A DNA stretch of 63,725 nt, counting the filler, from Octopus bimaculoides (taxonomy: Eukaryota): NCBI RefSeq assembly GCF_001194135.2. It is 8 parts of 7 records of this genome, joined end to end, with 100 filler letters (N's around TTAATTAATTAA, not from the genome) between each part and the next. Parts side by side here need not be neighbours in the genome. Positions count along the whole stretch, not along the records: positions 1 to 17,723 come from NC_068983.1; 7 more parts are not named here. One strand, 5' to 3'. Each line of letters starts with the position of its first letter. Position 1 is the first letter of the stretch. The notes below the pieces were generated by a model. The model did no database searches. It was given only the letters and a program-made list of their open reading frames with translations, and had not been told where the DNA came from. This document shows positions 1 through 17,723 of this stretch, one piece after another. Made by a program: the position numbers and the translations under genes.

Positions 1-185
1 TTATTCCTTGTCAGTCGTGCATACCTCTGTTCATCACTTTCAGATGCTCTGGCTTTTGTAGTGCACAGTCTGTTCTTTTCTTGGTGTGCTTCCCTTTCTG
101 CAGCTGTCTCTCTTTTTCTGGACAGAGACGTTCTTTTGGCTGACCTTGATTTTATAGACAAATTTGACATTTTCCTTCTAGGCAT
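1..185 (-). CDS. STPR-repeat protein, N-terminal part (runs off the window edge; not in ORF track)
   Basis: Hand translation from ATG at 185: MPRRKMSNLSIKSRSAKRTSLSRKR-ETAAEREAHQEKNRLCTTKARAS-ESDEQRYARLTRN, with no stop to position 1. It has 23-aa periodicity E[TS]xxER..R as in STPR repeats and an ACCATG start context. Confidence 0.75.
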   Translation of the reverse strand, partial: MPRRKMSNLSIKSRSAKRTSLSRKRETAAEREAHQEKNRLCTTKARASESDEQRYARLTRN

Positions 186-242
186 GGTTATATACGTATA
201 CAGAAATACACGAGTGCAGAAGATAGTAAACAATGAAACTAA

Positions 243-445
243 CTTGGTAACGGAAATTATGTTTCTTAATACGACAGGCAGAAAGTCAATAAGAATTTTT
301 AACGAAAAATAAAGTATTGTACAGGTTGAAGCGAAATTTGTCACTCAGTGAACCAAAGAGCCAGTATCGAAGGTACCAGAAGAAAAAAAAGAAACCTCAG
401 CAACAGGAAAACACAAAACCGTACTTCTGTTAGTAAATTACTTAC
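243..445 (-). other. Candidate 5'UTR intron of the left STPR gene
   Basis: Minus-strand donor GAT|GTAAGT at 445-440; candidate acceptors CCAAG| (244-243) or TTAG| (240-239) upstream of ATG 185. Confidence 0.5.
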
Positions 446-607
446 ATCAGTAAATGTGAACGTCTTTCTGTCAGTAATTTGTCGTTTGTTTGTAAATAGC
501 GATTGAAAACGTAATCTTTTAGTGAGAACAAAAGTGAAAAAAAAAACTATGGCGTAGAGATAGATAGAGAGAGATGGATTGAGAGATATAGATAGAGATA
601 TGTTTCC

Positions 608-724
608 TACGTCAATACCGGAAGTTGACATTTCATCACAAGTATGTAAGCATTTGGTACAAAAACGTCAAAATAGAGAGCGAAGCTTTTTGCCGTTGTT
701 ACGTCAATACCGGATGTTGACATT
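608..724. promoter_or_regulatory. Duplicated 25-bp ETS + CRE-half-site module, putative promoter of the left STPR gene
   Basis: TACGTCAATACCGGAAGTTGACATT (608-632) and TACGTCAATACCGGATGTTGACATT (700-724), 24/25 identical. Each contains ACGTCA and CCGGA[A/T]GT. Confidence 0.55.
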
Positions 725-1178
725 AAGGAACCTTTTTAAAGAAGTGAATCTTAAATATAAAACAATATTATTTATTTTTAATAAAAAAAAATCAAATGAA
801 GAGCCTAACATTTATCCGAGGTCAAATTCTCCATGCATCACAAGTATGGAAGCATTTGGTGAAGTCGATTTCACGTGAAAAGCGAATACACAGACATCTC
901 TATTTTATATATTAGATTAAAAAAGTTCAAACGGGGAATTATTCTATTCAATGTCTTTCAGCTAGAAACGTTTAGACCTTTAGCTGAAATATTTAGCATA
1001 ACTAGTTTTCTGGTGAGAGCAGCATTGCCTGCTGCTTCAGTAGAAATCTACGGATGCACAAACGCACAAAACGGAGAAACTGAAACAAATATGGACGACT
1101 TGTTCCAAAACACCCCCGAGTGGGGAACAATCCTCGAAAGTAACCCCAATTGTTTTTCCCCAAAATTCCTATGTTCTG

Positions 1179-1556
1179 GGAATCTACATAGTCCGAGGTA
1201 TATTTGTAGAAAATTTCATTAAAAAATATCAATTTTCTTAAAAGTTAAGACGAATTGAATTGGACGCCGGTGAATTTTCCGAAATTCCCCACCTACCCCC
1301 TCCTAAAACACTCCCCTCCCCCAAGTTTTGTATATTCGGAATCTACATGATATAACACATATTCGTAGAAAATTTCATTAAAAAATATCCATTTTTCTGA
1401 AAGTTATGATCATCAAAAATCGGGAGGGGGTAGGAATCTGGGTAAATTTTCAGATTAACACCCGCACGATTTTCACTAGGGTGTTAGGGTGGGAATTCCG
1501 TCCCTAACCCTAACCCCCTAGAGAAAATTGTGCGGGTGTTAATCTGAAAATTTACC
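1179..1556. repeat. Non-autonomous element remnant with internal direct repeat and a hairpin enclosing telomere-like TTAGGG/CCCTAA
   Basis: 41-bp inverted arms 1441-1481 / 1516-1556 (2 mismatches) around TTAGGG...CCCTAACCCTAACCC. A 25-bp identical direct repeat lies at 1206-1230 and 1365-1389. Confidence 0.6.
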
Positions 1557-1790: not shown

Positions 1791-3104
1791 TTAAATTTCA
1801 GTACGGATTACTTTCATCAATTTCCTAGTGATTAGTTTGTGATTGTAAACCGACGTAATGTCAATATATTTCAAAACATGATCTAAAGAGAGCTTTCGTA
1901 TAGACTTGTTTTTTTTAATTAGAAAGACCTGTTGGTCCATGAACTGGAGAATGGAAGATGTAATGACAGGCAAGAAATGTACTTTTACAAACTAAACTGT
2001 CCTGACAATCAATACATTAAAGAAGGTTTAGGCGAGTCATTATCCATTACCAAAAGAACTTTGAGAGAAGATTGTTGTCCCTAGGGTACTTAGACACAGT
2101 AGGACAAAACACCTCAGACTACTCAGTGAAAAGATGACTGGTGATTTGTGGTTTGCCCAAACCTCAAGGCGGTTCTTATGATTTTAAATGCTCTAGGGTT
2201 TTCTAAATAGTAATTTATTTAAAAAAAAAAAGCCCCGTTTCATCATAGTTCAAATTTTGCTGTGAAACGAAGCCACTCATCTCCATAAAGTTTAAAAAGT
2301 GGTACTCACGAGCTACTTTATGGTCTGCACCAGCAGACTTATCACACTTTACATCATTATGTAATCCATTTCTTTTCCGGAATCTGGTAAACCAGCCCTT
2401 TGAAGCAAGGAAATCCAGCGCAGTATCATTTCCACTGGGAGAATTAGCTACAAGATCATCAAATAATTGTTTGGCTTTTACACAAATCATCGATTCACTT
2501 ATATTTTCACAAGCAATTTCTTTTTCTTTAATCCACACCAAAAGTAAATTTTCCATCTCTTCAATAAAATTGTTACGCGATTTACTAAGCTTGGTTATTC
2601 CCTTAGCTACCCGAACATTTTTTAATTTACATTTGTTTTTCAGTATGGTGCAGATAGTTGATTTTGCCACTCTATACTCCAAACTAAGGTTGCTAACACT
2701 AGCTCCATTTTCATGTTTACGTATTATTTCCTTCTTAGTTTCTATAGTAATTGATTTTCTAATTCGCTTTTGTCGATCCATGGTTATATAATTAGCTAAA
2801 AATGAGAAATAGTATTATTTTCTAAATAAAATATGAAAATTTGTGTACGTGAACGTTAACGAACCGTTCGTATATACCTTCCCAGCTACTTATATGTGTG
2901 CGTAGTCCACTCGTTCGTTATTCACAATTTATTCATTTAGCGTACCGTTCGTACACGTTCTACCACTCACTTATATGCGTGCATAGTCTGTTCGTGCTTG
3001 GTTAATCAAATTTTAGCTCGTTAAGCGAGTTCAATTTTCTTCGGAAAAATCGTTCGTTATTCAATGTTTGTTTAAAGAATCGTTCGTACATGAGTACCCT
3101 ACTG
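1791..3104 (-). mobile_element. Tigger/pogo-family DNA transposon, degenerate
   Basis: TIR-like 5' end CAGTAGGGTACTCATGTACGAACG (3104-3081) and subterminal CGTTCGT repeats. The HTH ORF ends at NYDETGL (first D). Downstream frameshifted remnants read ENPRAFK, KVLLVMDND and VHFLPVITSSILQFMDQQV, matching Tigger DDE motifs. Confidence 0.9.
2215..2781 (-). pseudogene. Tigger transposase N-terminal fragment (CENP-B/psq-type HTH + Tc5-type HTH), 188 aa open frame
   Basis: RKSITIETKKEII...SVSNLSLEYRVAKSTICTILKNK, EEMENLLLVWI, ICVKAKQLF, FLASKGWFTRFRKRNGL; the frame ends at a poly-T run. Confidence 0.85.
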
Positions 3105-4053: not shown

Positions 4054-4659
4054 GTGACAAATATAATTTTACTTCTGAATATATTCCTAGCCTTGAACTA
4101 AAACAATTTGGGGTTTATATATTCTTATATAGAATTCGTGTTTTGTAACATAGCTTTCTTTGTACAATGATTGCTGAAACTGACATTACAAATACTTTAT
4201 TGTGGATAACGATGATAAAAATTTTGATAAATAGAGGATATGGCTTTATTAATCTGGGAATCTGAATGAGACTTAAGTAGATCATCTATTTGTTTGGCTT
4301 ACATGGTCTTTAATGAAATTATAAGGCCAATACAGTTTTGAGACAGGCTATTCTTTATATTGGCTGCTGTATAGTCATTATATTTTCATTTACCACTATG
4401 GTCTCATAATCTGCATGAAATGGCAATTTGGGATTAATTGAAACTATATAAATTCTATGAACATTATAAGGCCTTTAAGGGCTCCTCGCTTAGTCATAAT
4501 CTTATCTAATTTCAGAAGTCATCATCATTGTTTTAATGCCCCATTTTCTATGCTTGCAGGGGTCAGATTTTCTACGGCCAGGTGCCTTTCTGTTGTCAGA
4601 CTTTACATGTTTCCAAACAAGGTCATATTTTCTCAATGGAAATGAATAATACCATTTGT

Positions 4660-5430
4660 AGCTGTGGCCAGTGCCCCCTGACTGGCACCTGTTCCAGTGG
4701 CATGTAAAATGCATCATCTGAACATGGTCGATGCCAGGTCCGCCTGACTGGCTCCCGTGTGGCATGTAAAAAAACACCATTCAAATGTGATCGATACCAA
4801 AACTGCCCGACTGGCTCTCGTACTGGTGGCATGTAGAAAACACCATCCGAATGTGGCCGTTGCCAGTACTCCTTGACTGGCTCCCGTGCCGGTGGCATGT
4901 AAAAAGCACTATCCAAACGTGATTGATGCCAGGCCCGCCTGACTAGCTCCTGTGCCGGTGACATGTAAAAAGCACCCACGACACTCTCGGAGTGGTTGGC
5001 ATTAGGAAGGGCATCCAGCTGTAGAAACATTGCTAGATTAGATTGGAGCCTGGTGCAGCCACTGGTTCTCCAGACTTCAGTCAAACCGTCCAACCCATGC
5101 CAGCATGGAAAACGGACATTAAATGATGATGACAATCAATTACACCTATTGCATAATGTGAAACCAAAATCGCAGCTGTGGCCAGTGCCTCTTGATTGGT
5201 TGCCGTTTCAGTGGCACATAAAATGCATCATCTGAATGTGGTCGATACCAGTGTCCCCTGACTGGCTCCTGTGCCAGTAGCATGTAAAAAGCACCCTCTG
5301 AATGTGGCTGATGCCAGTAACCCTGACTGGCTTCTGTGACAGTGGCATGTAAAAAGCACTATCTAAACGTGATCGATGCCAGGCTGCCTGACTGACTCCT
5401 TTTTTCAGTGGCATGTAAACGATGATCATG
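4660..5430 (+). repeat. RTE-LINE 3'UTR-derived repeat with about 65-bp tandem subrepeats
   Basis: About 9 copies of GGCATGTAAAAAGCAC-like cores at about 65-bp spacing. The tail at 4977-5135 matches the tails at 7800-7975 (-) and 10050-10218 (+) and ends in (GAT)n. Confidence 0.75.
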
Positions 5431-6751: not shown

Positions 6752-7735
6752 CTATAGAGTTGAATATCCATTCACAGAAAATAAATTAACTGGATATGAT
6801 TTAGAATTTGATGTAGGCAGCGTACTTGAGATCTCTACCAAATCAGAATTATTGCTGAGGTTGTCTTCAATTATATTGCCTGTTACAGATGTTATTGAAA
6901 TTAGCTGTACTTCATCCTGATCATCAGTATCGTTATCACAATCTTCTGAATGCTGCGATAAACAAGTGTCTTCAGATATATAGATGACATCACGGGAATC
7001 CAGATGTTTATTTGAATGAGAAACTCCAAAATCATTGTGTCTATTGATGACCTTTCCAGAAGTGGTACTGGCAGCAGGCTTTAACTGAACATCATTATTA
7101 TTTGTAGTAATGTTACTAATATCAACACACAGTTCTTCTTGAATACTATTTTGATTTTCTCCAAGACTACAGGGTTCTATTTTTAAGTGAAGAGAGTTGT
7201 ACTTTGTTGCAGGCTCTATTAATGGTTCCGCTTCAGTCTTGATATCAACAATCTGGTCTGTAACCATATTTTCTGCAGACCTTACATCAGAAACTGAAGT
7301 TGTGGTGACAGAAACATCAGCTTGCATGTTAATATTGCTATAATTATTCCTAAATAACTTCATAAACATTGAATTCTGAACCTCGTTAGGATCTCCTTGT
7401 GTTCTGGAAGGGAATAATCCTGACAAAGAACAAGGTTCTGCCAATAAAGGTTCCACCACACCAGATAAAATATCTTTTGTCTTAGCTTTGTTCAATTCCT
7501 CACAACAAAGATCTTCAAAATCTTTCATTTCTAATTTTTCAGCAATAGTCTTCAGTTGGACTAGAATGTCTTCATTCAGATCTAACACACCACTGTACAT
7601 GTATTCTGCAAATGCTAAAAGTCCTTCTTTACTGACTGAACTTGGAAAGACCACATTGGGAAATGAACCTTTTGATGAATGCAGGAGAACTGGCAGTAGT
7701 TTTGGAGACACAGCTCCTAAAACCATTTTATGAAT
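6752..7735 (-). CDS. STPR-BTB gene, last coding exon: C-terminal part of BTB/POZ domain plus low-complexity S/D/N tail
   Basis: Acceptor ttttttatatattttcAG| at 7736, phase 0. IHKMVLGAVSPKL...LLAFAEYMYSGVLDLNEDILVQLKTIAEKLEMKDFEDLC follows the BTB pattern (HkxvLaa.S; ll.ymYtG.l; A..L.m..l...C). Stop TAG at 6752-6754. Confidence 0.9.
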   Translation of the reverse strand: MHKMVLGAVSPKLLPVLLHSSKGSFPNVVFPSSVSKEGLLAFAEYMYSGVLDLNEDILVQLKTIAEKLEMKDFEDLCCEELNKAKTKDILSGVVEPLLAEPCSLSGLFPSRTQGDPNEVQNSMFMKLFRNNYSNINMQADVSVTTTSVSDVRSAENMVTDQIVDIKTEAEPLIEPATKYNSLHLKIEPCSLGENQNSIQEELCVDISNITTNNNDVQLKPAASTTSGKVINRHNDFGVSHSNKHLDSRDVIYISEDTCLSQHSEDCDNDTDDQDEVQLISITSVTGNIIEDNLSNNSDLVEISSTLPTSNSKSYPVNLFSVNGYSTL

Positions 7736-7799: not shown

Positions 7800-8515
7800 T
7801 ATCATCATCATCATTTAATGTCCATTTTCCATGCTGGCATGGGTCAGACGGTTTGACTGAGGTCTGGAAAGTCAGCCGCTACACCAGGCTCCAATCTGAT
7901 CTGGCAATGTTTCTCCAGCTGGATGCTCATCCTAACACCAACCACTCTGAGGGTGTAGTGGGTGCTTTTTACATCACACTGGTACAGGAGCCAGTCAGGC
8001 AGCTCTAGTATTGATCACATTCGGATGGTGCGTTTTATGTGCCACCGGCACAGGAGCAAGTCAAGGGGCACTGGCATCGAACACGCTTGGGTGAGGCATT
8101 TTACGTGCCACCAGAACAACAGCCAGTCAGAGGGCACTGGCCACAGCTACAATTTTGGTTTTACTTGACTCAACAGGTCTTCTAAAGCATATCATATTGC
8201 CCAACACATCAAAGGTACTTTTAAATGGGCCGGATATGCAACACTGGCATTGGCCGTGGCTCCGATCTCACTTTAGTTCCCTGGTCTTCTCAATCACAGC
8301 ATATCTCCAAAGGTCTCAGTCTCCTGTCATTGCCTCCGTGAGGCCTAAAATTCGAAGGTCATGCTTCACCATCTCATCCCATGTCTTCTTGGGTCTACCT
8401 CTTCCACAGGCTCCTTCCACAGTTAGGGTGTGGCACTTCCTCACACAGCTGTCCTCATCCATGTGTAACCATACCAGTGCAGTCATCTCTCTTGCACACC
8501 ACATTTGATGCTTCT
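7800..8515 (-). mobile_element. RTE-clade LINE, 3' fragment
   Basis: DEDSCVRKCHTLTVEGACGRGRPKKTWDEMVKHDLRILGLTEAM (post-RT C-terminus), followed by a 3'UTR and (GAT)n tail. Confidence 0.85.
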
Positions 8516-8974: not shown

Positions 8975-10218
8975 TCCCCAAGATGTACCCAGTGCAAGCT
9001 ATGGACACATAAGAGGTGCAGCAATATCAGAGGAAGGTTAACTGGAAAAATAGCTTTTGTGTGTGGAAGGTGCACAGGTACAATAAACACTAAAAATGTG
9101 CAGGAAATAGGACTCTATAAGATGCCAGTGGGGTAAGCTAGAGGTAGTGGATAGCTTCCATTATCTAGGTGACTGAGTCAGAAGTGGAGGTGGATGCTCT
9201 GAAAGTGTAGCTGTGAGAATAAGAATAGGCTGGGCAAAGTTCAGAGAGTTCCTACTTCTGTTGGCAACAAAGGACCTCTCCCTCAGAGTGAAAGGCAGAC
9301 TGTATGATGTCTGTGTGCAATCAGCTATGTTACATGGCAGTGAAACATGGGCTGTGACAGCCGAGGACATGCGTAGGCTTGAAAGAAATGAAGCCAGTAT
9401 GCTTTGCTGGATGTGCAATGTCAGTACGCATGTTTAACAGAAAAAAGTTAGGCACAAGAGGCATCATATGTAGTGTGCAAGAGAGATGACTGTGCTGGTA
9501 TGGTCATGTGATGCATATGGACGAGGACAGCTGCGTAAAATGCCGATCTCTAACTGTGGAGGGAACCTATGGTAGAGGTAGATCCAGGAAGACATGGGAT
9601 GAGGTGGTGAAGCATTATTGTCGAATGTTGGGCCTCACAGAGGCAATGACTAGAGACTGAGACTTTCGGTGATATGCCATGCTTGAGAGGACCTGTCAAG
9701 CCATGTGAAACCATAGTCGTGGCCAATGTCGTTGTCATATTACTGCCACTTGTACTGGTGCCATGTAAGAGCACCTTTTGAATGTTAGGCCTCGTGACCA
9801 TTGCTGGTGTTGTGACATTAGCATCCGTGCTGGTGGCACTTGAAAAGCCTCTTTTGAGTGTTGGGCCTCATGGAGGCAATGTAGCGGATGCTACTGTCAT
9901 GTAACTAGCACCCGTGCTGGGTGTTGGGCCTCACAGAGGCAATGGCAAATGACCAAGACCTTCGGCAATATGCTGCACTTGAGAAGAAGCCCCATCAAAC
10001 CAAGTGAAACTGTAGTCGTGGTAGTTACTGGTGCCAGGCAACTGGCATGTAAAAGCACCCATTACACTCTTGGAGTGGTTGGCTTTAGGAAGGGTATCCA
10101 GCTATAGAAACAATGCCAAATCAGACTGGAGTCTGGTGCAGCCCCTCAGCTTATCAGCCCTGGCCAAACTGTCCAACCCATGCTAGCATGAACAACAGAC
10201 GATGATGATGATGATGAT
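8975..10218 (+). mobile_element. RTE-clade LINE, 3' part, degenerate
   Basis: VDSFHYLGD, RIRIGWAKFREFL, KGRLYDVCVQSAMLHGSETWAVTAEDMRRLERNE, GRGRSRKTWDE, then a 3'UTR ending in (GAT)n at about 10200-10218. Confidence 0.9.
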
Positions 10219-10552
10219 TGTTGAAAACATAGGATTCTAAAGAAGTTTTTGGAAAAAATAAAACTAAAGGAAGTAGGGTGCATATCTGACATGCCACTTC
10301 TAATTTCTTCCATTATACAACTGTTTATACTTACTAATTCCTAAGCATACCATCACTGATTTGTTTGGATCACAAGACTTTGGTCAAGATAGGACTACAG
10401 TAAAAGACTTGCCAAGGTGCCCTGTAGTGGGACTGAATCTGAAACTTTGTCTTTGATACTTTTGAAGTTGATAAAATAAAATACTAGTTAGATGTTGGAA
10501 GTTGAGATACATAATCCTAGATGTGAATAAAATAGAATTAAAACATACATAC

Positions 10553-10730
10553 CATTACATTTATGGTACCATTACTAATGTATGAGTCACAGAGGCGCCG
10601 TGCCTTCCATAGAGAAAACAGATTGGACATTACTGCTGTTTGATGATTTGGAACGACTAAAACACGTCTTTCTTGAACAGGAGGCACAGTTGATTGTGGG
10701 AACACTATGACTTCATCAGTCATTGAATGA
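10553..10730 (-). CDS. STPR-BTB gene, exon encoding the BTB N-terminus
   Basis: Acceptor gtatttacAG| (phase 2), donor ATG|GTATGT (phase 0). HQTAVMSNLFSLWKARRLCDSYISNGTINVM matches the BTB start (H...l..L..lr....LCD) and joins in frame to IHK of the next exon. Confidence 0.85.
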
Positions 10731-13120: not shown

Positions 13121-13771
13121 CTGTGAAATAGAATATAAGTAACTCTAATACTCAATTAGGATCATTTTAAAATATGAAGTGGTTAGGAAAGACAAAATAG
13201 TAGATGTGTTAGAATATTGTTGAGATTTCAAAATGACTTAGGTAATAATTGAACAATTATCCAAACAGGAATACAATGCAGAGTCATGGAAATCACTTGA
13301 AAACAACACTATCAGAAGACAGTAAGGTATATACATCCTTTGGTGTAAATGACTAAGTAGACTGATGATAAAATCTAACAAACAAAACATTTGCTGTTTA
13401 GATCATATGATGTAGTTAAAAATTCTCAAGAAGAAACCTGCATGCACTGTGACTTATTCAAAACCCAAATACTATTTGAGTGAAGAATGAAGTATATACA
13501 AGGTTCTGATAGTTGTCACATGACACACATTGTAAACAGTAACATAAATCAAAATGATAACAATAATAATATAAAAGACTATGATTATATCAGAATATTC
13601 AAATTAGTTTAAAAGTGAGCAACAGTTCAAATTATCTAAGCACAATGGGCAGCAACTAATTGTACAAAATATTAACATCAGTTATGAGAGTCAAACATAT
13701 AAATGCTTAAATATGTACAGAAATTAAACTAGATATCACAGTTAAATGAAAAAATTCAGAGGGACAAATAC

Positions 13772-14201
13772 CAGGATTATATTGCATCTGCTCCTGATGA
13801 TGGAATTTTGGGACATCATAATACTTTAAAAGGTTGACTTTAATGTAGCCATTAGCAATTTGCTTTTCTTCTTGAGCCTTTTTACCCTGTCGAGTATAAT
13901 GATTCTTTGGCCCTGTAGCACGTCTGTTCCTTGCATATTGAGCAAGTTTCTTAAGTCTTTCATATCTTTCCTCTTTTGTTTCTTTGGTCCTTCTTTTCAA
14001 TTCATTCTGAGACAATCTTCTAAGCCTCTGTTTTCTCTCTTCTGCTGTTTCTTCAGCTCGTCTCTTCTGTGCATTTAAAGACAGCTTTCGTAGTCTCTCA
14101 AGTCTCTCATCATTTGTTTCATTTGCACGTCTTTCTCTTTCACGCAGTTTTTTGGCTTCTTGCTTTTCAGTTTCATTATGGTATTTCTTGAACCGCCCCA
14201 T
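13772..14201 (-). CDS. STPR-BTB gene, first coding exon with three 23-aa STPR repeats
   Basis: Acceptor ttctttgaAG| at 14211, ATG at 14201, donor CTG|GTATTT at 13771 (phase 1). Repeats: ETNDERLERLRKLSLNAQKRRAE / ETAEERKQRLRRLSQNELKRRTK / ETKEERYERLKKLAQYARNRRAT. Confidence 0.85.
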
Positions 14202-17482: not shown

Positions 17483-17723
17483 AAGTTGTTGGCACGACGT
17501 CGAGGGTTCCAATTGATCCGATCAACGGAACAGCCTGCTTGTGAAATTAACGTGCAAGTGGCTGAGCACTCCACAGACACGTGTACCCTTAACGTAGTTC
17601 TCGGGGATATTCTGCGTGACACAGTGTGACAAGGCTGACCCTTTGAATTACAGGCACAACAGAAACAGGAAGTAAGAGTGAGTGAAAGTTGTGGTGGAAG
17701 AGTACAGCAGGGTTCGCCACCAT
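17483..17723 (-). mobile_element. tRNA-derived SINE family A, 3' part (truncated by gap)
   Basis: Near-identical to 44750-45000 and the reverse complement of 30900-31160. Confidence 0.85.

What the first reader, a model, noticed from the sequence alone, without database searches (positions are those of the whole stretch)
1..724. Second STPR-repeat gene hidden at the window edge: a tandem STPR cluster, possibly Helitron-derived
Seen: an ORF missed by the track (185 to 1) encodes a basic N-terminus plus 23-aa repeats. It is preceded by a 5' intron (GTAAGT at 445) and a promoter-like module, the same layout (non-coding exon, then ATG plus STPR exon) as the gene 14 kb upstream on the same strand. 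From recall, similar MPR...ETxEQR..RL repeats occur at the N-terminus of animal Helitron Rep/helicase proteins. Inference: this is either a domesticated Helitron DNA-binding module amplified into a local gene family or the 5' end of a Helitron ORF.
Basis: partly seen in the sequence, partly recalled or inferred. Interest (0 to 1): 0.7.

Follow-up and report, generated by a model that had tools for sequence, protein, structure and literature searches.

The report
Dead Helitron transposon's front end
The small open reading frame at the window edge is the first 61 codons of the transposase of a broken copy of a common Helitron transposon, lying between two real host STPR-BTB genes; it is ordinary.

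Summary
The ORF is real: ATG at 185, minus strand, open to base 1, 61 codons. It is not a host gene. Window 1-441 has at least 40 scored copies in this 2.34-Gb genome at 86-97% identity. A full-length relative on contig C5 carries one unbroken 1454-aa frame that starts with the same MP(R/T)RK... sequence and then has Helitron_like_N and PIF1 helicase domains. Copy alignments give the family's ends as A|TC...CTAG|T. The 5' TC lies at window 916-915, so all of 1-916 is Helitron.

Left of the window is a 1297-N scaffold gap. The contig beyond it repeats window 1-441 (440/441 identical). It then continues the frame into an in-frame TAG, a frameshift, an internal deletion and the 3' CTAG end. This is a dead, internally deleted copy, or two tandem copies.

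The 23-aa repeat is weak. Pfam STPRs gives no hit on the ORF, but a profile comparison gives 95% probability. Related Helitron proteins carry clear STPR domains, which is already published (HELIANO, 2024).

A tandem STPR cluster does exist nearby: at least three STPR-BTB host genes with an Argonauta hians relative. The Helitron sits between two of them. Interest is low.

The parts
1..185 (-). First 61 codons of a Helitron RepHel (transposase) frame: a basic MPRRK start followed by about two degenerate STPR-like 23-aa units. It is cut by the contig end at a scaffold gap.
   Evidence: Searches give the ORF. phmmer with the full-length relative matches its residues 1-61 at window 3-185 (E 4e-19). 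A 440/441-identical copy left of the gap continues into Helitron_like_N.
186..916 (-). Non-coding 5' leader of the Helitron, from the 5' terminus to the ATG. It includes the GTAAGT at 445-440.
   Evidence: Blocks 2-461, 497-553, 556-601, 604-861 and 708-923 recur in other genomic copies at 75-97% identity.
915..917 (-). Helitron 5' terminus: TC at 916-915, preceded by the host A at 917.
   Evidence: In an alignment of eight copies, homology starts at A|TCTAATATATAAAATAGAGATG. Upstream flanks are unrelated and often (TA)n.
555..601 (-). (TCTCTATC)n-like microsatellite inside the 5' leader. It is much expanded in the full-length copy L023.
   Evidence: Tandem Repeats Finder. There are multiple matches to L023 1188-1400.
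608..724 (-). Internal duplication in the leader: 25-nt repeats with TGACGTA at 608-632 and 700-724.
   Evidence: The block 604-861 recurs in copy L003/L013 at 92.6%.
13707..14201 (-). Context, not part of the Helitron. First coding exon (STPR domain) of host STPR-BTB gene A. The coding part probably ends near 13775 at a GT donor.
   Evidence: Pfam STPRs E 2.4e-10. Only three local paralogs exist in the genome. tblastn with Argonauta hians P0024 maps residues 1-95.
6752..7735 (-). Context. Last large exon (BTB domain and tail) of host STPR-BTB gene A. A small BTB exon lies at 10550-10681.
   Evidence: Pfam BTB E 4.9e-5. P0024 residues 285-561 and 242-285 map here.

Best explanation
Window 916 to 1 (minus strand) is the 5' end of a decayed, non-autonomous copy of a canonical Helitron, a rolling-circle DNA transposon. 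The edge ORF is the start of its Rep/helicase transposase.

In intact members, this basic, STPR-like N-terminus precedes three further parts: a Cys-rich CxxC...CC.GKV.LP motif, the HUH Rep domain and a PIF1 helicase. I infer that the N-terminus acts as a nucleic-acid-binding or nuclear-targeting part of the transposase. This was not shown here.

The copy here cannot transpose itself. The near-identical sequence beyond the scaffold gap shows:
- an in-frame TAG at codon 92;
- a frameshift;
- loss of everything after RepHel residue 478;
- a junction to the last ~200 bp of the element, ending in CTAG.

The copy lies in the spacer between two tandem host STPR-BTB genes. It shares only the ancient STPR repeat type with them.
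For: (1) Copy number. Window 1-441 matches at least 40 scored loci at 86-97% identity, out of 992 first-look candidates.

(2) Continuation.
- L011 8241-8681 is 440/441 identical to window 1-441.
- It reads on into the CxxC motif and Helitron_like_N (PF14214, E 2e-11).
- phmmer places RepHel residues 1-193 and 316-478 there.

(3) Intact relative. L023 2614-6975 is a 1454-aa unbroken frame, and its DNA is 91% identical to window 4-298. It carries Helitron_like_N (E 2e-60), PIF1 (E 1.5e-67) and Pif1_2B. Copy L015 (93% DNA identity) shows the same N-terminus joined to the Rep domain, including the RGLPHVHILLW motif.

(4) Termini.
- 5': A|TCTAATATATAAAATAGAG in eight copies.
- 3'...CCCGGGCAACGCCGGGTGCCTCTGCTAG|T followed by TA-rich flanks in twelve copies, one of them the L011 copy itself.
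- A 5-bp GC stem ends 12 nt before the 3' end.

(5) Public relatives. All 20 database relatives of the N-terminal 200 residues are long proteins, 18 of them with PF14214. Three also carry PF21107 STPRs.

(6) The region. In the 37.7 kb examined, RepHel homology exists only at window 3-185 and L011 7403-8425.
Against: - The part of the ORF inside the window (61 codons) has no significant Pfam hit of its own. Its identity rests on homologous copies.
- The link from the window to the L011 continuation crosses a 1297-N gap. Physical continuity is therefore inferred from a 441-bp near-identical overlap, not seen directly.
- The 3' hairpin is short. Its fold energy is not unusual against shuffles (z = -1.19), and in the local copy it is weakened by a G-to-A change.
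- No transcript data were available, so weak expression of the 91-codon remnant cannot be excluded.
Confidence: 0.93

Rival explanations
1. The edge ORF is a fourth member of the local host STPR gene family: a true tandem paralog of the gene at 13707-14201.
For: Same strand. Similar MPR-basic start and ET..ER...RL spacing. Pairwise BLASTP E values are 0.004-0.01, and the profile match is 95%.
Against: - The three local STPR exons have no other relatives in the genome, while the edge sequence has dozens.
- The local genes continue into BTB exons like Argonauta P0024. The edge ORF's copies continue into Rep/helicase.
- Identity to the local genes is only about 27%, against 76-88% to Helitron N-termini.
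Confidence: 0.02
2. The remnant is an exapted (domesticated) Helitron fragment. The 91-codon frame ending at the TAG would encode a small STPR-like DNA-binding protein, driven by the Helitron leader and possibly using the GTAAGT at 445 as a 5' intron donor.
For: - The 91-codon frame is intact up to the TAG.
- The leader holds duplicated TGACGTA (CRE-like) motifs.
- STPR domains are DNA-binding transcription-factor modules, as stated in PMC11417382.
Against: - The copy is 5-13% diverged from its relatives and carries the usual decay: stop, frameshift and deletion.
- Many other equally truncated copies exist.
- There is no sign of orthologous conservation and no transcript evidence.
- The only base that differs between the two gap-flanking copies removes the AG at about 239, one of the last AGs before the ATG.
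Confidence: 0.03
3. A structural alternative within the Helitron reading. The locus holds two near-identical head-to-tail Helitron copies, one ending in the window and one in L011, rather than one copy split by a spurious gap.
For: - The gap is sized at 1297 N. Two ~1.95-kb units in tandem would need about 1507 bp of hidden sequence, which is close.
- Other loci show head-to-tail arrays of 5' pieces of this family: L006 has two 5' ends and three copies of block 323-461, and L013 has a second 5' end after the truncated ORF.
- One mismatch exists in the 441-bp overlap.
Against: - Contig ends that overlap by 441 bp at 99.8% across a gap are the usual signature of an unmerged overlap in a short-read scaffold.
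- The left contig stops exactly where family copies diverge (about 435-461), a typical assembler break point.
- Gap sizes in such assemblies are rough.
Confidence: 0.35

Closest known systems
Canonical animal Helitrons (HLE1 in the HELIANO classification) encoding a RepHel with an N-terminal STPRs domain
   Same: - Domain order in the intact relative: basic/STPR-like N-terminus, Cys-rich motif, Helitron_like_N (HUH Rep), PIF1 helicase.
- 5' TC and 3' CTAG ends, with a GC stem before the 3' end.
- Insertion between A and T, often in (TA)n.
- Many truncated and non-autonomous copies.
- STPRs is listed among the domains stably carried by HLE1 elements (PMC11417382).
   Different: In this family the STPR repeats have decayed below Pfam's threshold (10.4 bits in the intact copy). 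The copy in the window is a dead, internally deleted fragment.
STPR-domain transcription factors (Pfam PF21107: FMBP-1 / ZNF821 type), here the neighbouring octopod STPR-BTB genes
   Same: 23-residue basic repeats with the ET.E.R...RL pattern. Profile-profile match of 95% probability.
   Different: - The host genes are low-copy (three local paralogs).
- They pass the Pfam cut-off.
- They splice to BTB exons and have an Argonauta hians counterpart.
- The edge ORF does none of these.

Membership tests
Helitron (canonical, HLE1) | Encodes, or derives from an element encoding, a RepHel protein with an HUH Rep domain plus a PIF1-type helicase. | tested here: met
   The intact family member L023 has Helitron_like_N (E 2e-60) and PIF1 (E 1.5e-67) in one 1454-aa frame. 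The local copy keeps residues 1-193 and 316-478 only.
Helitron (canonical, HLE1) | 5' terminus TC. | tested here: met
   Homology among eight copies starts at TCTAATATATAAAATAGAG. In the window, TC lies at 916-915 on the minus strand.
Helitron (canonical, HLE1) | 3' terminus CTRR, preceded by a short GC-rich hairpin. | tested here: met
   Twelve copies end in ...CCCGGGCAACGCCGGGTGCCTCTGCTAG. A CCCGG/CCGGG stem ends 12 nt before the end. The stem is short, its energy is not unusual against shuffles, and it is weakened in the local copy.
Helitron (canonical, HLE1) | Insertion between host A and T, with no target-site duplication and no terminal inverted repeats. | tested here: met
   A precedes the TC in the window, L005, L007 and L019. 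T follows the CTAG in all twelve aligned 3' ends. Flanks are often (TA)n.
Helitron (canonical, HLE1) | Dispersed multi-copy distribution. | tested here: met
   At least 40 scored 5'-end copies, 108 Rep matches, and at least 40 scored 3'-UTR and 3'-end copies each.
STPRs domain (Pfam PF21107) | Score above Pfam's gathering cut-off (27 bits). | tested here: not met
   No hit on the edge ORF or its 91-aa extension at E <= 0.01. The intact relative scores 10.4 bits, E 0.91.
STPRs domain (Pfam PF21107) | Homology to bona fide STPR proteins at profile level. | tested here: met
   - hhalign of the Helitron N-terminal alignment against the local STPR genes gives 95% probability, E 3e-8.
- Three of nine aligned Helitron N-termini pass Pfam STPRs (best E 1.8e-13).
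- Another Helitron family in this genome scores 91.8 bits.
- Caveat: biased, charged repeats can inflate such scores.
Local octopod STPR-BTB gene family | Low copy number, an STPR first exon spliced to BTB exons, and a counterpart in another octopod. | tested here: not met
   The edge sequence is high-copy and is followed by Rep sequence, not BTB. The true members map to P0024 exon by exon.

The most novel reading that the evidence does not exclude
The octopod STPR-BTB gene family and the STPR module of Helitron transposases may share a recent, direct origin: either a host gene built from a Helitron N-terminus, or a capture in the other direction. A Helitron landing inside this very cluster might then reflect more than chance, for example targeting by its own STPR domain. 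My evidence shows only that the two share the STPR repeat type (95% profile match). It neither supports nor excludes a direct link.
Probability: 0.07. Interest if true: 0.45.

Novelty: already known. Interest (0 to 1): 0.1.

Why it matters
It matters little in itself. It is one more dead Helitron copy in a repeat-rich genome, probably an octopod's.

Two practical points follow:
- An annotator should mask window 1-916 as Helitron and should not call a gene there.
- The scaffold gap to the left is flanked by a 441-bp near-identical overlap and is probably an assembly artefact.

The real biology nearby is a tandem array of STPR-BTB host genes. STPR-type repeats at Helitron N-termini are already documented.

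Tried and rejected
- **False 3' end.** I first took the ...CTGCTAG motif in L023 7363 and L011 7209 for a SINE tail, because a 182-bp block ending there is very abundant and BLAST matches ran on into (TA)n. Aligning twelve copies with their flanks showed that homology stops exactly at CTAG|T. A RepHel-bearing copy on C16 runs straight from its 3' UTR into this block. It is therefore the Helitron 3' end, shared with a more abundant non-autonomous family.
- **3' flank search.** A search with L023 6900-8100 was swamped by an unrelated ~440-bp repeat.
- **Long Helitron frames with strong STPR hits.** I used the loci already returned (L063, L065) instead.
- **Exact-sequence look-up of the window's STPR protein.** Nothing was found. 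A homology search with the L012 STPR paralog found one unnamed 164-aa relative, P0023, in the public read assemblies.
- **Organism.** It could not be named directly. The best named relative of the BTB exon is from Argonauta hians.
- **Not attempted.** The bacterial promoter/terminator scan does not apply to a eukaryote. dN/dS and a tree of single 23-aa repeats would be uninformative for about two degenerate units.

Full report
**What is at the coordinates**

On the minus strand an ATG at window 185-183 opens a frame that runs to the window edge. It reads MPRRKMSNLSIKSRSAKRTSLSRKRETAAEREAHQEKNRLCTTKARASESDEQRYARLTRN. GTAAGT is at 445-440. Two 25-nt direct repeats containing TGACGTA lie at 608-632 and 700-724, and a (TCTCTATC)n-like tract lies at 555-601.

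The '23-aa repeat' is thin. There are about two units (R23-A45 and R46-R68), and I count 5 of 23 identical positions. Pfam's STPRs model (PF21107) gives no hit at E <= 0.01.

**The window edge is a scaffold gap with an overlap**

The window is G000:C3:135394878-135412656, in a 2.34-Gb genome of 145,327 contigs. Immediately to its left are 1297 N (L011 8682-9978). The contig on the far side ends with a stretch, L011 8241-8681, that is 440/441 identical to window 1-441. It stops exactly at the window-equivalent of position 441.

Either the two contig ends are one locus that the scaffolder failed to merge, or there are two near-identical head-to-tail copies. A two-copy layout would need about 1507 bp in the gap, against the 1297 N recorded. 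Other loci of this family do show head-to-tail 5' pieces (L006, L013). I cannot decide between these, and I favour the single locus at about 0.6 to 0.35. In either case the L011 copy shows how the frame continues.

**How the frame continues**

In L011 the ORF reads on as ...KISNAERRAVAKAQRSNFYEAAFNYDPAVH. It then hits an in-frame TAG where the other copies examined have Tyr (AVHYADD...).

The same frame then gives TECIHCKARKWPGETLALCCSGGKVKLP, the Cys-rich motif seen in all the Helitron proteins examined here. Next comes a 10-N gap that stands where residues 194-315 would be. After that comes Helitron_like_N (PF14214, E 2e-11).

phmmer with the intact relative places its residues 1-193, 316-435 and 438-478 at L011 7403-8425, in three different pieces and frames. 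It places residues 1-61 at window 3-185. It finds nothing else in the 37.7 kb examined.

After ...TFTCNPKWK the coding sequence breaks off at L011 ~7405. Through 24 bp of filler it joins the last ~200 bp of the element.

**The family**

- Window 1-441 matches at least 40 scored loci at 86-97% identity, out of 992 first-look candidates.
- Copy L015 (C10, 93% identical) joins the same N-terminus to a Rep domain containing RGLPHVHILLW, then runs into an assembly gap.
- A Rep-domain search found 108 matches in the genome.
- One of these, on C5 (L023 2614-6975), is an unbroken 1454-aa frame. It starts MPTRKRSNLSKISRSAKRMSLSRERETPEEREARQEMNRLCTTKARASQSDEQRNARLTRN....
- That frame carries Helitron_like_N (residues 361-541, E 2e-60), PIF1 (1001-1213, E 1.5e-67) and Pif1_2B.

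**Termini**

Aligning the upstream ends of eight copies shows homology starting at TCTAATATATAAAATAGAGATG. It is preceded by A, and beyond that by unrelated and often (TA)n sequence. In the window the TC is at 916-915 and the A at 917.

Aligning twelve 3' ends, one of them the L011 copy itself, shows homology ending at ...CCCGGGCAACGCCGGGTGCCTCTGCTAG. This is followed by T and TA-rich, otherwise unrelated sequence. A CCCGG/CCGGG stem ends 12 nt before the terminus. It is short, not exceptional against shuffles, and weakened by a G-to-A change in the local copy.

Most of the 3'-end copies belong to a different and far more abundant non-autonomous family that shares only the last ~182 bp.

The local element therefore runs from window 916 down through the gap to L011 ~7209.

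**The STPR question**

That is correct and is already published.

- In this genome PF21107 gives 59 hits.
- Several hits lie 1.4-2.4 kb upstream of Helitron Rep hits, on the same strand. One (C2:146327967) is reported with the same 1038-aa open-frame length as its Rep hit.
- A 340-aa frame from another Helitron family (L063) scores 91.8 bits on STPRs (E 3.7e-26). It then shows the same F.YEP..NY and CxxC...CC.NGKV.LP layout.
- All 20 relatives of the N-terminal 200 residues, found among 5.8 billion proteins, are long proteins (941-1884 aa). Eighteen carry PF14214, and three of them also carry PF21107.
- Their N-termini show plain 23-aa repeats, for example SRAAETPEERDTRL..QRVRA.T in P0005.
- The HELIANO paper lists STPRs among the domains stably carried by Helitron-like elements, almost only in HLE1 (PMC11417382).

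In the family studied here the repeats have decayed. The intact copy scores 10.4 bits, E 0.91. A profile of nine Helitron N-termini, headed by the edge ORF, still matches the neighbouring STPR genes at 95% probability, E 3e-8. Charged repeats can flatter such scores.

What the N-terminus does in the transposase (DNA binding, nuclear import) is inference from what STPR domains do elsewhere. It was not tested.

**The neighbouring 'STPR gene' and the real cluster**

The ORF at 13707-14201 passes Pfam STPRs (E 2.4e-10). It has exactly two other relatives in the whole genome. Both are on the same strand within 34 kb: L011 4109-4726 and L012 1-530.

A search with the BTB-containing ORF at 6752-7726 found an Argonauta hians protein, P0024 (563 aa), that carries STPRs at its N-terminus and BTB further on. 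tblastn maps it exon by exon:

| Gene | Exons mapped (minus strand) |
|---|---|
| A | window 14201-13917, 10681-10550, 7735-6800 |
| B | L011 4612-4145, L011 1689-1597, L012 8565-8434, L012 6691-5726 |
| C | starts at L012 486 and runs off to the left |

So there is a tandem array of at least three STPR-BTB host genes. The Helitron sits in the spacer between genes A and B. The edge ORF is not a member:
- It is high-copy.
- It is 76-88% identical to Helitron N-termini but about 27% identical to the host genes.
- It is followed by Rep sequence, not BTB.

**Intron and promoter claims**

These could not be tested, because no transcript data are available. The stretch between 445 and the ATG varies by large insertions among copies. 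That fits a non-coding leader or an intron equally well.

**Verdict**

This is an ordinary, dead Helitron fragment. It is already known in kind, down to the STPR-type N-terminus. Interest is low.

The only reading with some novelty is a direct evolutionary link between the Helitron STPR module and the octopod STPR-BTB family. My data neither support nor exclude it.

Noticed in passing
window 14201-6752 (minus); L011 4612 to L012 5726; L012 486 leftwards: There is a tandem array of at least three host genes encoding an N-terminal STPR domain plus a BTB domain. The exon structure matches Argonauta hians protein P0024. The STPR exons have no other relatives in this genome.
   Followed up: partly
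L011 5947-7026 versus window 906-1346: The Helitron is bracketed by a large inverted repeat: 86-90% identity, arms of at least 440 bp, interrupted by an N gap in L011. It is probably two opposed copies of another repeat, or a foldback element into which the Helitron inserted.
   Followed up: no
window 2215-2781 (minus); L011 2954-3631 (minus): Two ORFs carry CENP-B_N and HTH_Tnp_Tc5 domains, the Tigger/pogo transposase N-terminus. One lies in the spacer next to the Helitron. The other lies inside an intron of STPR-BTB gene B.
   Followed up: no
L034-L044 (dispersed loci); L011 7186-7367: The last ~182 bp of the Helitron 3' end is shared at 92-96% identity with a much more abundant family whose upstream sequence is different. 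This is presumably a non-autonomous Helitron riding on the same 3' end. There were 841 first-look candidates.
   Followed up: partly
L006 (C16:16931133-16934587); L013 1610-1970 (C13): Some loci hold head-to-tail arrays of 5' pieces of this Helitron. L006 has two 5' ends and three copies of block 323-461. L013 has a second 5' end right after a truncated ORF.
   Followed up: no
window 4650-5420, 7800-8180, 10040-10220: A tract of tandem repeats recurs in both orientations within introns of gene A, at 72-82% identity. From the offsets of the self-matches I estimate a unit of about 66 bp. Its ORFs read ...FYMPP.REPV....
   Followed up: no
window 17494-17723 versus L011 5282-5509: A 230-bp stretch is 96.5% identical between the right end of the window and the spacer upstream of gene B. 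It was not characterised.
   Followed up: no
L011 7851-7860 and many other loci: The assembly is peppered with N runs. A 10-N run inside the local Helitron stands where about 120 codons of RepHel would be. It may hide sequence rather than mark a deletion.
   Followed up: no
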